A stretch of 64,000 nt of DNA from Octopus sinensis. Taxonomy: Eukaryota. Both the position numbers and the translations under genes were made by a program. The stretch lies in contig NC_043002.1 of NCBI RefSeq assembly GCF_006345805.1, positions 49,786,001-49,850,000 on the forward strand. The letters are read 5' to 3'. The notes below the pieces were generated by a model. That model had not been told where the DNA came from. It saw only the letters and a list, made by a program, of their open reading frames with translations, and searched no databases. Position 1 is the stretch's first letter, and every line of letters starts with the position of its first letter. Below, one piece after another: positions 58,632 to 58,868 of the stretch.

Positions 58632-58868
58632 ATAGAATGGTTGTATACTGTCAATCTAACAAGAACGTGACAGTAGGGGGTACACCACCGCTGTATAGCC
58701 CTAGGAAGCATCGAACGCCTCCTGATGGCTTTGACACATTTTTCCCTGTGTCCTTATATACATTGTCAAAGCCATCAGGAGGCGTTCGATGCTTCCTAGG
58801 GCTATACAGCGGTGGTGTACCCCCTACTGTCACGTTCTTGTTAGATTGACAGTATACAACCATTCTAT
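58632..58868. repeat. Perfect palindrome: 105-bp arms, 27-nt spacer
   Basis: 58632-58736 is the exact reverse complement of 58764-58868. The two ORF-track entries share an identical N-terminus for this reason. Confidence 0.98.

What the first reader, a model, noticed from the sequence alone, without database searches (positions are those of the whole stretch)
58632..58868. Perfect 105-bp-arm palindrome in otherwise decayed DNA
Seen: zero mismatches between the arms, a 27-nt spacer, GC content well above the surroundings, and no similarity to other repeats in the window. Most other repeats here are visibly diverged. A degenerate Helitron-like 3' hairpin lies at ~58485-58510 and a TCTATATA.. 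start follows the right arm. Inference: a very young fold-back element (the ends can be read as TA|GAATGG..CCATTC|TA), arms kept identical by intrastrand conversion, or a hairpin RNA gene yielding endo-siRNA or an ADAR substrate. Caution: part of the spacer (CTGTGTCCTTATATACAT) loosely resembles the Tn5 mosaic end, so a library artifact must be excluded.
Basis: partly seen in the sequence, partly recalled or inferred. Interest (0 to 1): 0.7.

Follow-up and report, generated by a model that had tools for sequence, protein, structure and literature searches.

The report
Young perfect hairpin-forming inverted duplication
A 237-base stretch of non-coding animal DNA is a flawless mirror copy of itself, most likely a very recent copying accident (the DNA-copying machinery folding back on its own strand); the same window holds older, decayed examples, so it is real but fairly ordinary.

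Summary
Arms 58632-58736 and 58764-58868 are 105 nt and 100% complementary, with a 27-nt asymmetric spacer. The unit is single-copy in the window and far beyond chance.

Two side remarks fail or weaken:
- The "Helitron-like hairpin" at 58485-58510 does not fold (z +0.22).
- The GC excess is modest: 47.6% against 37.6%, and 14% of 105-nt windows reach it.

The Tn5 mosaic-end resemblance is only 15/19 plus a gap. Five ordinary loci in the window match as well, and no exact adapter is present.

No relative of the arms turned up in proteins, Rfam, plasmids, phages, prokaryotic genomes, viral contigs or metagenomes.

The new evidence is that the window carries further short-spacer inverted duplications of graded age:
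- 9856-10039: 63/64 arm identity.
- 32448-32585: 54/59 arm identity.
- 32605-32638: 15-nt arms.

In the 32.5-kb case one arm is colinear with an intact Tc1-like transposase, and the other arm truncates that gene. That shows local fold-back duplication happened here.

Best reading (about 0.5): a very recent fold-back or template-switch inverted duplication, with no function shown. Rivals are a young TA-targeting MITE (about 0.27), an assembly or library artefact (about 0.1), and a hairpin-RNA gene (about 0.05). Reads, genome-wide copies and an orthologous empty site could not be checked.

The parts
58632..58736 (.). Left arm of the palindrome (105 nt, GC 47.6%, 4 CpG). It contains a small internal inverted repeat, TACTGTCA (58646-58653) / TGACAGTA (58668-58675).
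58737..58763 (.). Asymmetric 27-nt spacer, CATTTTTCCCTGTGTCCTTATATACAT. Its last 18 nt loosely resemble the reverse complement of the Tn5 mosaic end (15/19 plus one gap).
58764..58868 (.). Right arm, the exact reverse complement of the left arm. It runs without a break into a TA-rich tract.
58733..58753 (.). Alternative central mini-hairpin, GACACA (58733-58738) / TGTGTC (58748-58753), with an 8-nt loop. TGTC occurs twice (58750-58753 and 58764-58767). This could be a slipped priming register for a fold-back event (inference).
   Evidence: the minimum-energy fold shows a small stem inside the loop; direct reading of the sequence
58580..58631 (.). 52-nt unique block between (AT)31 and the left arm (GC 44%, 4 CpG). 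Its composition is continuous with the left arm. It holds CGGTGGTG (58619-58626), the complement of CACCACCG in the left arm (58683-58690); the chance probability is about 0.13.
58519..58579 (.). Perfect (AT)n microsatellite, 61 nt. It is itself capable of forming a cruciform.
58866..58898 (.). Imperfect TA-rich tract that overlaps and abuts the outer end of the right arm. The outermost TAT of the arm could equally belong to this tract, giving up to 3 nt of junction microhomology.
9856..10039 (.). Comparator B, a second single-copy palindrome. Arms are 64 nt (9856-9919 / 9976-10039) with 63/64 identity; the spacer is 56 nt. Its outer ends are also TA..TA, and its right arm abuts a (TG)n tract.
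32448..32585 (.). Comparator C, an older fold-back duplication. Arms are 59 nt (32448-32506 / 32527-32585) with 54/59 identity; the spacer is 20 nt. The left arm and spacer are native Tc1-like transposase coding sequence. The right arm is its inverted copy and truncates the gene after residue 250.
32605..32638 (.). Comparator C2, a perfect hairpin with 15-nt arms and a 4-nt loop. Its right arm is the first bases of a SINE-like copy, so it looks like a snap-back junction scar.

Best explanation
A genuine, evolutionarily very recent local inverted duplication in non-coding DNA of a microsatellite- and SINE-rich animal genome.

Proposed mechanism: during replication, or during repair of a break next to the AT/TA microsatellites, a 3' end switched template. 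It either folded back on its own strand or moved to the complementary strand. It then copied about 102-105 nt of the adjacent sequence in reverse-complement orientation and rejoined the chromosome, probably using the TA/TAT microhomology at the outer right junction.

One event of this kind gives two perfectly complementary arms around a short asymmetric loop. No gene conversion is needed to explain the perfection; the arms have simply not had time to diverge.

What is shown: the structure, its uniqueness in the window, its youth, and that the same kind of event happened elsewhere in the window.

What is inferred: that this particular palindrome arose that way, which arm is the copy, and the enzyme involved (a Pol-theta-like snap-back or a replicative template switch). 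No function is shown. If transcribed it would form a 105-bp perfect double-stranded RNA.
For: (1) The perfect 105-nt arms and 27-nt asymmetric loop are the expected product of one switch-and-return event. Template-switch mutations are documented to create perfect hairpins in a single step (PMC5453318; PMC10710096). Pol theta extends stem-loops from as few as two terminal base pairs and uses alternative, slipped pairing registers (PMC11292364).

(2) The same window holds a graded-age series of short-spacer inverted duplications:
- 58632-58868: 105/105, spacer 27.
- 9856-10039: 63/64, spacer 56.
- 32448-32585: 54/59, spacer 20.
- 32605-32638: 15/15, loop 4.

(3) In the 32.5-kb case the origin is demonstrable. 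The window copy is colinear with intact transposases P0001 (residues 1-250) and P0002 (residues 13-274) up to base 32527. Residues 225-246 then recur on the opposite strand at 32583-32518, and residues 251-349 are missing. The arm there is internal coding sequence, not a terminal repeat.

(4) The flanks are asymmetric. The left arm continues into a 52-nt unique block of similar GC and CpG content, while the right arm abuts a TA tract with up to 3 nt of ambiguous TAT. This is as expected if left block, left arm and spacer are native and the right arm is the copy.

(5) There is no second copy, no sub-repeats, no target duplication beyond an ambiguous TA, and no similarity to any transposon in reach.

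(6) The comparators carry 1 and 5 arm mismatches, so they are aged genomic objects. The genome really does make and keep such structures, which lowers the prior for an artefact.
Against: - No ancestral or empty-site sequence could be obtained, so the direction and even the local origin of the copy are unproven.
- There is no in-register microhomology at the inner junction (ACAT|TGTC). Only an out-of-register GACACA/TGTGTC mini-hairpin with a duplicated TGTC offers one, and this needs an extra slippage step.
- A 105-nt copied tract is longer than the stems of about 35 bp discussed in the template-switch paper read here. That documented events are usually tens of bases is from my own knowledge of that literature, not from a figure I verified.
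- Both this palindrome and comparator B end in TA..TA, which is what a Tc1/mariner-type target duplication would look like.
- The microsatellite context is not informative. There are 97 TA blocks in 64 kb, and 53 of 96 inter-block gaps are 300 nt or less.
Confidence: 0.5

Rival explanations
1. A very young, non-autonomous DNA transposon. It would be a fold-back-shaped MITE of the TA-targeting Tc1/mariner type: a 233-bp element GAATGG...CCATTC inserted at a TA and mobilised in trans by a transposase that binds the arms.
For: - Its size (237 bp) and its almost-all-TIR architecture fit.
- The ends can be read TA|...|TA, and so can those of the second palindrome at 9856-10039. I estimate the chance that both do so at roughly 1-4%.
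- Tc1/mariner relics are present in the window.
- A repeat annotation of Octopus vulgaris lists 65 single-insertion 'MITE families' totalling 12,729 bp (mean 196 bp) among recently active insertions. Objects of this shape are therefore routinely filed as MITEs (PMC13282606). The window's organism is unproven.
Against: - There is no second copy in 64 kb.
- The termini GAATGG / TAGAATGG do not resemble the CAG-type ends usual for Tc1/mariner (my own knowledge).
- There is no similarity to the window's Tc1/mariner relics or to the intact relatives L001-L003.
- TA is self-complementary, so it cannot be told apart from the arm itself.
- There is no 3-, 8- or 9-bp target duplication.
- The 79-residue translation of the palindrome has no relative among 5.8 billion proteins. 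These include gene calls on large contigs that carry Tc1-like transposases related to the window's relic (organism unknown).
Confidence: 0.27
2. An assembly or library artefact. A chimeric fold-back molecule or read would have been taken into the consensus at a low-coverage spot beside the (AT)31 tract. Possible sources are snap-back fill-in, whole-genome amplification, a transposase library or a missed hairpin adapter.
For: - Perfect arms are what an in-vitro fold-back gives.
- The spacer's Tn5 mosaic-end resemblance scores 11, reached by only 0.09% of window 27-mers.
- AT microsatellites are known coverage-dropout sites (my own knowledge).
- Palindromic chimeras from amplification and fold-back reads are documented (PMC6218980; PMC12870357).
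Against: - A real adapter would be exact and would carry its neighbouring adapter bases. Here the match is 15/19 plus a gap, the best ungapped match anywhere in the window is 15/19, and five ordinary loci score 11 or more.
- The SMRTbell, ONT, TruSeq and MGI adapters do not match. Adapter sequences were recalled from memory.
- Fold-back read artefacts fold near the read midpoint. They are about 0.6% of ONT genomic reads, are virtually absent in HiFi, and are rarely recurrent. Here the arms stop after 105 nt and both sides continue into different unique sequence.
- The window has no N and is otherwise coherent.
- Aged palindromes of the same design, with 1 and 5 mismatches, exist in the same window.
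Confidence: 0.1
3. A functional hairpin-RNA locus. Transcription through the palindrome would give a 105-bp perfect double-stranded RNA, processed into endogenous siRNAs or hyper-edited by ADAR. This is compatible with either real origin above.
For: - The RNA fold is -215.9 kcal/mol with z = -29.8.
- Rfam shows only sub-threshold microRNA-hairpin hits (33.7 bits against a threshold of 95), and these reflect the stem alone.
- Template-switch events are a documented source of new hairpin-RNA genes (PMC10710096).
Against: - There is no expression data.
- No Rfam family matches at threshold.
- The arms have no detectable homology to any protein-coding gene that could be a target. The one hit, P0025, is a 12-residue motif (6/12 identical) repeated 13 times in a translated tandem repeat.
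- The locus sits in a gene-poor stretch of transposon relics and microsatellites.
- There is no conservation evidence.
Confidence: 0.05

Closest known systems
Template-switch mutations (Ripley model; four-point model of Loytynoja & Goldman, PMC5453318; hairpin and microRNA birth, PMC10710096)
   Same: A nearby segment is copied in reverse complement in one event. This gives a perfectly paired stem with an unpaired loop, in non-coding DNA and with no transposase.
   Different: At 105 nt, the copied tract is longer than the miRNA-type stems (about 35 bp) discussed in PMC10710096. That documented template-switch events are usually tens of bases is from my own knowledge. The ancestral state was not available here, so the four switch points cannot be placed.
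Snap-back / synthesis-dependent microhomology-mediated end joining by Pol theta (PMC5728401, PMC11292364)
   Same: An inverted-repeat insertion at a junction next to structure-forming repeats, with TA/TAT microhomology possible at the outer junction. The 15-nt-arm, 4-nt-loop hairpin at 32605-32638 and the 32.5-kb gene-truncating fold-back look like such scars.
   Different: The repair insertions in that literature are, to my knowledge, much shorter than 105 nt (not verified in the papers read here). The inner junction of the main palindrome has no in-register microhomology.
Tc1/mariner-type (Stowaway-like) fold-back MITEs
   Same: Small size, almost entirely terminal inverted repeat, ends readable as a TA duplication, and an AT-rich target.
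   Different: No second copy seen, no match to any autonomous element in reach, and atypical terminal bases. Perfect 105-nt arms would need an extremely young family.
Foldback (FB) elements of Drosophila and relatives
   Same: A hairpin-forming element with long inverted arms.
   Different: By my knowledge, FB arms are hundreds to thousands of bases built from tandem sub-repeats, with a 9-bp target duplication. Neither feature is present here (flanks GGTGGGGCG vs ATATTATAT).
Hairpin-RNA (hpRNA) endo-siRNA genes of Drosophila
   Same: An inverted repeat that would give a long perfect double-stranded RNA.
   Different: By my knowledge, hpRNA arms derive from, and target, a protein-coding gene. 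No such homology was found, and no expression data exist.

Membership tests
Template-switch / fold-back inverted duplication | A segment present as an exact reverse-complement copy of immediately adjacent sequence, separated by a short spacer. | tested here: met
   Arms 105/105, spacer 27 nt.
Template-switch / fold-back inverted duplication | An ancestral or allelic state with only one arm, or the native context of one arm recognisable. | not testable with these tools
   No eukaryotic genome or read data are reachable, and the window's ORFs are absent from the 15-billion-protein collection. The feature is met for comparator C at 32448-32585, where the left arm is colinear with intact transposases.
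Template-switch / fold-back inverted duplication | Microhomology at the switch points. | tested here: inconclusive
   At the outer right junction, up to 3 nt (TAT) are shared with the TA tract. The inner junction has none in register; only the out-of-register GACACA/TGTGTC with a duplicated TGTC is available.
MITE (Tc1/mariner-type) | Terminal inverted repeats and small size (under about 600 bp). | tested here: met
   237 bp with 105-nt arms.
MITE (Tc1/mariner-type) | TA target-site duplication. | tested here: inconclusive
   The ends read TA|GAATGG..CCATTC|TA, but TA is self-complementary and the right flank is a TA tract.
MITE (Tc1/mariner-type) | Multiple dispersed copies. | tested here: not met
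   There is no other copy in the 64-kb window. Genome-wide copy number is not testable. There are also no exact matches in metagenome, viral or prokaryote collections.
MITE (Tc1/mariner-type) | Terminal similarity to an autonomous element. | tested here: not met
   No similarity to the window's Tc1/mariner relics or to loci L001-L003, which carry intact relatives.
Foldback (FB) elements | Arms built of tandem sub-repeats, with a 9-bp target duplication. | tested here: not met
   There are 0 direct-repeat families in block, arm and spacer. The flanking 9-mers GGTGGGGCG and ATATTATAT differ.
   Region 58470-58520 folds at -2.7 kcal/mol with z = +0.22.
Tn5 / Nextera library artefact | An exact 19-nt mosaic end with adjoining adapter sequence at the junction. 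| tested here: not met
   The match is 15/19 plus one gap, with no adapter beyond it. Five other loci score as well, and the best ungapped match in the window is 15/19. The adapter sequence was recalled from memory.
Long-read fold-back artefact | The palindrome is centred on a read, with arms running to the read ends and no support from other reads. | not testable with these tools
   No reads are available. The structure argues against it: the arms stop at 105 nt and both flanks are unique (criteria from PMC12870357).
hpRNA / endo-siRNA gene | Transcription and small-RNA production, with arms homologous to a target gene. | not testable with these tools
   No expression data are available. The homology part was tested and not met.

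The most novel reading that the evidence does not exclude
The palindrome is the youngest product of an unusually active fold-back or template-switch process in this genome. At least four short-spacer inverted duplications, with 0-8.5% arm divergence, lie in 64 kb. Such a process would continually seed long perfect double-stranded-RNA-forming hairpins, and some of these could be transcribed and feed siRNA or ADAR-editing pathways. If the source is a cephalopod, as the repeat landscape suggests to me from memory only, this would link genome mutational style to the lineage's heavy use of RNA editing.
Probability: 0.07. Interest if true: 0.6.

Novelty: new member of a known kind. Interest (0 to 1): 0.27.

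Why it matters
On its own it matters little. It is one neutral-looking structural mutation in a gene-poor, repeat-rich stretch.

It has three modest uses:
- It is a clean, datable example of how a long perfect hairpin can appear in one step. Such hairpins are the raw material for hairpin-RNA genes and a potential fragile site.
- Together with the older examples in the window, it hints that fold-back duplication is frequent in this genome. That can be tested genome-wide.
- It warns against annotating single-copy palindromes as MITEs on structure alone.

Tried and rejected
1. Independent assemblies of the locus. The two 70-residue ORFs through the palindrome and eight other window ORFs are not in the protein or contig collections, so no spanning sequence could be fetched.

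2. Coding origin of the arms.
- The 79-residue frame has no hit at E <= 0.1 among 5.8 billion proteins.
- The other open frame has one hit among 1.84 billion representatives. It turned out to be a 12-residue motif (6/12 identical) repeated 13 times in a translated tandem repeat, so it was rejected.

3. Known RNA families. Nothing reaches threshold. Only weak microRNA-hairpin hits appear, and any perfect stem gets these. No tRNA was found.

4. Contaminant, vector or foreign DNA. No match in plasmids or phages by blastn. No exact 22-32-mers in prokaryote genomes, viral contigs or JGI metagenomes.

5. Adapter origin of the spacer. A panel of 14 adapters recalled from memory was tested. Only the Tn5 mosaic end (15/19 plus a gap) and the 454-B adapter (12/13 plus a gap) stand out. 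They overlap the same bases, neither is exact, and equal mosaic-end matches occur about once per 10 kb.

6. 'Inserted into a TA microsatellite'. Rejected as evidence. TA blocks are so dense (97 in 64 kb, with 53 of 96 gaps at 300 nt or less) that flanking TA tracts are expected.

7. CpG or GC foreignness. The window's CpG observed/expected ratio is 0.87 and the arm's is 0.67, and the arm's GC is reached by 14% of windows. This is no signal.

8. Helitron reading. No hairpin exists there.

9. Relation to the window's Tc1-like element or its intact relatives. None found.

10. Naming the organism. The accessions of related contigs and a SINE string are not in the paper library. The octopus-like impression rests on memory only.

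11. The CGGTGGTG shared by the left block and the right arm. The chance probability is about 0.13, so it was not used.

Full report
**1. What is there**

The window is eukaryotic. It is 37.6% GC, about 10% perfect simple repeats, has no N, and is full of SINE-like copies and Tc1/mariner relics.

At 58632-58868 lies a 237-nt unit made of two 105-nt arms that are exact reverse complements, around a 27-nt asymmetric spacer, CATTTTTCCCTGTGTCCTTATATACAT.
- As single-stranded DNA it folds at -149.1 kcal/mol, against -30.2 +/- 3.6 for shuffles (z = -33.5).
- As RNA it folds at -215.9 kcal/mol (z = -29.8).
- A centre-expansion scan of the whole window finds eight non-microsatellite perfect inverted repeats with arms of 12 nt or more and spacers of 60 nt or less. 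This is the longest by far at 105 nt; the next are 38, 28 and 22 nt.

**2.

- The arms, the spacer and the 52-nt block to their left have no other copy in the window, even with word size 7. All other hits are 14-29 aligned nt (at most 23 identical) at chance E-values.
- The whole interval 56880-60048 is unique apart from microsatellites. It is bounded by SINE-like copies at 56634-56879 and 60049-60289, which are 70-94% identical to their relatives.
- The GC excess is real but modest: arm 47.6% against window 37.6%, with 14% of 105-nt windows as GC-rich. CpG is not distinctive.
- The 'Helitron-like 3' hairpin' does not exist. Region 58470-58520 folds at -2.7 kcal/mol, no better than shuffles (z = +0.22). 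The repeated GGGTAA there is direct, not inverted.

**3. Is it an artefact?**

The spacer's last 18 nt align to the reverse complement of the Tn5 mosaic end with 15 of 19 bases and one gap. Three things argue against a real adapter:
- A real adapter in a consensus should be exact and should be followed by further adapter sequence. Neither is so.
- Five ordinary loci in the same 64 kb score as high or higher, and the best ungapped match anywhere is 15/19.
- A second 'hit', the 454-B adapter at 12/13 plus a gap, overlaps the same bases. This shows how easily CT/TG-rich sequence mimics adapters.

SMRTbell, ONT, TruSeq and MGI adapters do not match. All adapter sequences were recalled from memory.

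Published fold-back read artefacts fold near the read midpoint. They make up about 0.6% of ONT genomic reads, are virtually absent from HiFi, and are rarely recurrent (PMC12870357). Here the arms stop after 105 nt and each side continues into different unique sequence.

I cannot see reads, so an artefact at a low-coverage spot beside (AT)31 remains possible. I put it at about 0.1.

**4. Is it derived from something known?**

- No Rfam family reaches threshold. The weak microRNA-precursor hits (at most 33.7 bits against thresholds of 44-95) are what any perfect stem produces. No tRNA was found.
- A 79-codon frame runs open through the whole palindrome on both strands, but it has no relative among 5.8 billion proteins.
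- The other open frame of the arm gave one hit among 1.84 billion representatives. It is a 12-residue motif (6/12 identical) recurring 13 times in a translated tandem repeat, so the summed score is spurious.
- Plasmids, phages, prokaryotic genomes, viral contigs and JGI metagenomes contain nothing.
- The exact ORFs of the window are absent from the contig collection. No independent assembly, second haplotype or sister species could be reached. That is the main limit of this report.

**5. Transposon or local duplication?**

For a transposon (MITE):
- The size and the almost-all-TIR design fit.
- The ends can be read TA|GAATGG...CCATTC|TA.

Against it:
- There is no second copy.
- There are no sub-repeats in the arms.
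- There is no target duplication beyond TA, which is self-complementary and so indistinguishable from the arm. The right flank is itself a TA tract.
- The termini are unlike the usual CAG-type Tc1/mariner ends (my own knowledge).
- There is no similarity to the window's Tc1/mariner relics or to loci carrying intact relatives.

'Inserted into a TA microsatellite' carries no weight, because TA blocks occur 97 times in 64 kb.

**6. New evidence from the rest of the window**

A minus-strand self-comparison lists a series of close-range inverted repeats from 69% to 100% identity. Three are especially informative.
- B, 9856-10039: 64-nt arms with one mismatch and a 56-nt spacer. It is single-copy and its right arm abuts (TG)n.
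- C, 32448-32585: 59-nt arms with five mismatches and a 20-nt spacer.
- C2, 32605-32638: 15-nt perfect arms with a 4-nt loop. Its right arm is the first bases of a SINE-like copy.

For C the origin can be read directly.
- The window's Tc1-like transposase relic is colinear with the intact homologues P0001 (residues 1-250, 74% identity) and P0002 (residues 13-274) up to base 32527.
- There the colinearity ends. Residues 225-246 reappear on the opposite strand at 32583-32518, and residues 251-349 are missing.
- The arm is therefore internal coding sequence in its native context, and the other arm is a fold-back copy that truncates the gene.
- With one C.A mismatch the stem continues as CCTA/TAGG around a 10-nt loop (my reading). 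That is the kind of small pre-existing hairpin from which snap-back synthesis starts.

Local fold-back duplication has thus demonstrably happened in this window. Its products span arm divergences of 0%, 1.6% and 8.5%. They are real, ageing genomic objects.

**7. Mechanism I commit to**

The 58.6-kb palindrome is the youngest such event. A 3' end at a stalled fork or a break beside the AT/TA microsatellites switched template and copied about 102-105 nt of neighbouring sequence in reverse complement. It then rejoined, probably through the TA/TAT shared between the arm's outer end and the right-hand TA tract.

The left arm continues into a 52-nt unique block of like composition, while the right arm abuts the TA tract. 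That mildly favours the right arm as the copy.

The inner junction (ACAT|TGTC) has no in-register microhomology. The centre does offer an out-of-register mini-hairpin, GACACA(58733-58738)/TGTGTC(58748-58753), with an 8-nt loop and TGTC present twice (58750-58753 and 58764-58767). A priming-then-slippage path of the kind Pol theta shows in vitro is therefore conceivable but unproven (PMC11292364).

Template-switch mutations creating perfect hairpins in one step are well documented (PMC5453318; PMC10710096). At 105 nt this one is longer than the stems of about 35 bp discussed there. That such events are usually tens of bases is my own recollection of that literature, not a figure I verified.

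Perfection needs no gene conversion. Zero differences in 105 nt only bounds arm divergence below 2.9% at the 95% level.

| Reading | Confidence |
|---|---|
| Local fold-back / template-switch duplication | about 0.5 |
| Young MITE | about 0.27 |
| Artefact | about 0.1 |
| Functional hairpin-RNA locus, layered on either real origin | about 0.05 |

**8. Comparison with known kinds, and novelty**

It works like a template-switch or snap-back inverted duplication. Membership of that class is met for structure, but the ancestral state could not be tested here.

- It fails the tested defining features of Foldback elements (sub-repeats, 9-bp duplication).
- It fails those of a Helitron context.
- It fails those of a Tn5 artefact.
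- For a Tc1/mariner MITE it meets shape and size. It is inconclusive on TA, and it fails copy number (within the window) and similarity to an autonomous element.

A recent Octopus vulgaris repeat annotation lists 65 single-insertion 'MITE families' with a mean of 196 bp (PMC13282606). Structure-based tools would file objects like this as MITEs, so some of those calls may be fold-back duplications instead. I could not prove the organism. The octopus-like impression of the repeats is from memory only (searches found nothing).

**9. Verdict**

The finding is a real-looking, very young hairpin-forming inverted duplication. It is a new member of a known kind of mutation, with no function shown.

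Interest is low to moderate. The one thread worth pulling is the apparent density of such events in this genome: at least four in 64 kb. That is testable genome-wide and could matter for the supply of double-stranded RNA if the loci are transcribed.

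Noticed in passing
window 9856-10039: A second, unrelated, nearly perfect palindrome. Arms are 64 nt (9856-9919 / 9976-10039) with 63/64 identity; the spacer is 56 nt. It is single-copy in the window, its outer ends read TA..TA, and its right arm abuts a (TG)n/(CA)n tract.
   Followed up: partly
window 31742-32585: A Tc1-like transposase relic with two in-frame stops, 74% identical to the intact 349-residue P0001. 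It is colinear with P0001 up to residue 250 and is then truncated by a fold-back inverted copy of residues 225-246 on the opposite strand. Residues 251-349 are missing.
   Followed up: yes
window 32605-32638: A perfect hairpin with 15-nt arms and a 4-nt loop (AGAATGATAGAACAA gtat TTGTTCTATCATTCT). Its right arm is the start of a SINE-like copy. A direct repeat of about 34 nt (32504-32537 and 32573-32606, 85% identical) lies just upstream. The whole 32.45-32.64 kb stretch looks like a multi-step template-switch scar.
   Followed up: partly
window 30209-30802: Two SINE-like copies tail to tail, about 69% identical overall, with a perfectly identical 38-nt core next to the centre (30447-30484 / 30529-30566, spacer 44). 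This is either partial homogenisation of an old palindrome or two insertions sharing a conserved core. It was not resolved.
   Followed up: partly
window 5939-6030 / 6253-6347: An inverted repeat with 95-nt arms at 94% identity and a 222-nt spacer. Each arm contains an A/T homopolymer run. It could be a MITE or an older inverted duplication.
   Followed up: no
window 22000-22560: A very AT-rich block (GC 21.6% over 22-24 kb) with TA blocks recurring every 26 nt, giving many overlapping 150-185-nt imperfect palindromes. This is a short-period AT satellite.
   Followed up: no
window 38340-38850: A long A/T-rich trinucleotide-type tract, read as poly-Ile and poly-Leu ORFs of 134-160 residues. GC is 28.9% over 38-40 kb.
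   Followed up: no
window 8001-10000: Extreme strand asymmetry (GC skew -0.59, AT skew -0.33). It coincides with CT-rich simple repeats, which read as Leu/Ser-rich ORFs.
   Followed up: no
window 42359-42751 (-), 146-355 (+), 25790-26032 (+): Further mariner/Tc1-type transposase fragments, recognised by eye from the translations (helix-turn-helix and DDE-region motifs). They were not run against Pfam.
   Followed up: no
window 60044-60289 / 61440-61685 and 61856-62023: SINE-like copies in inverted orientation, 1.15-1.6 kb apart and about 90% complementary. These are ordinary dispersed copies rather than a local duplication.
   Followed up: no
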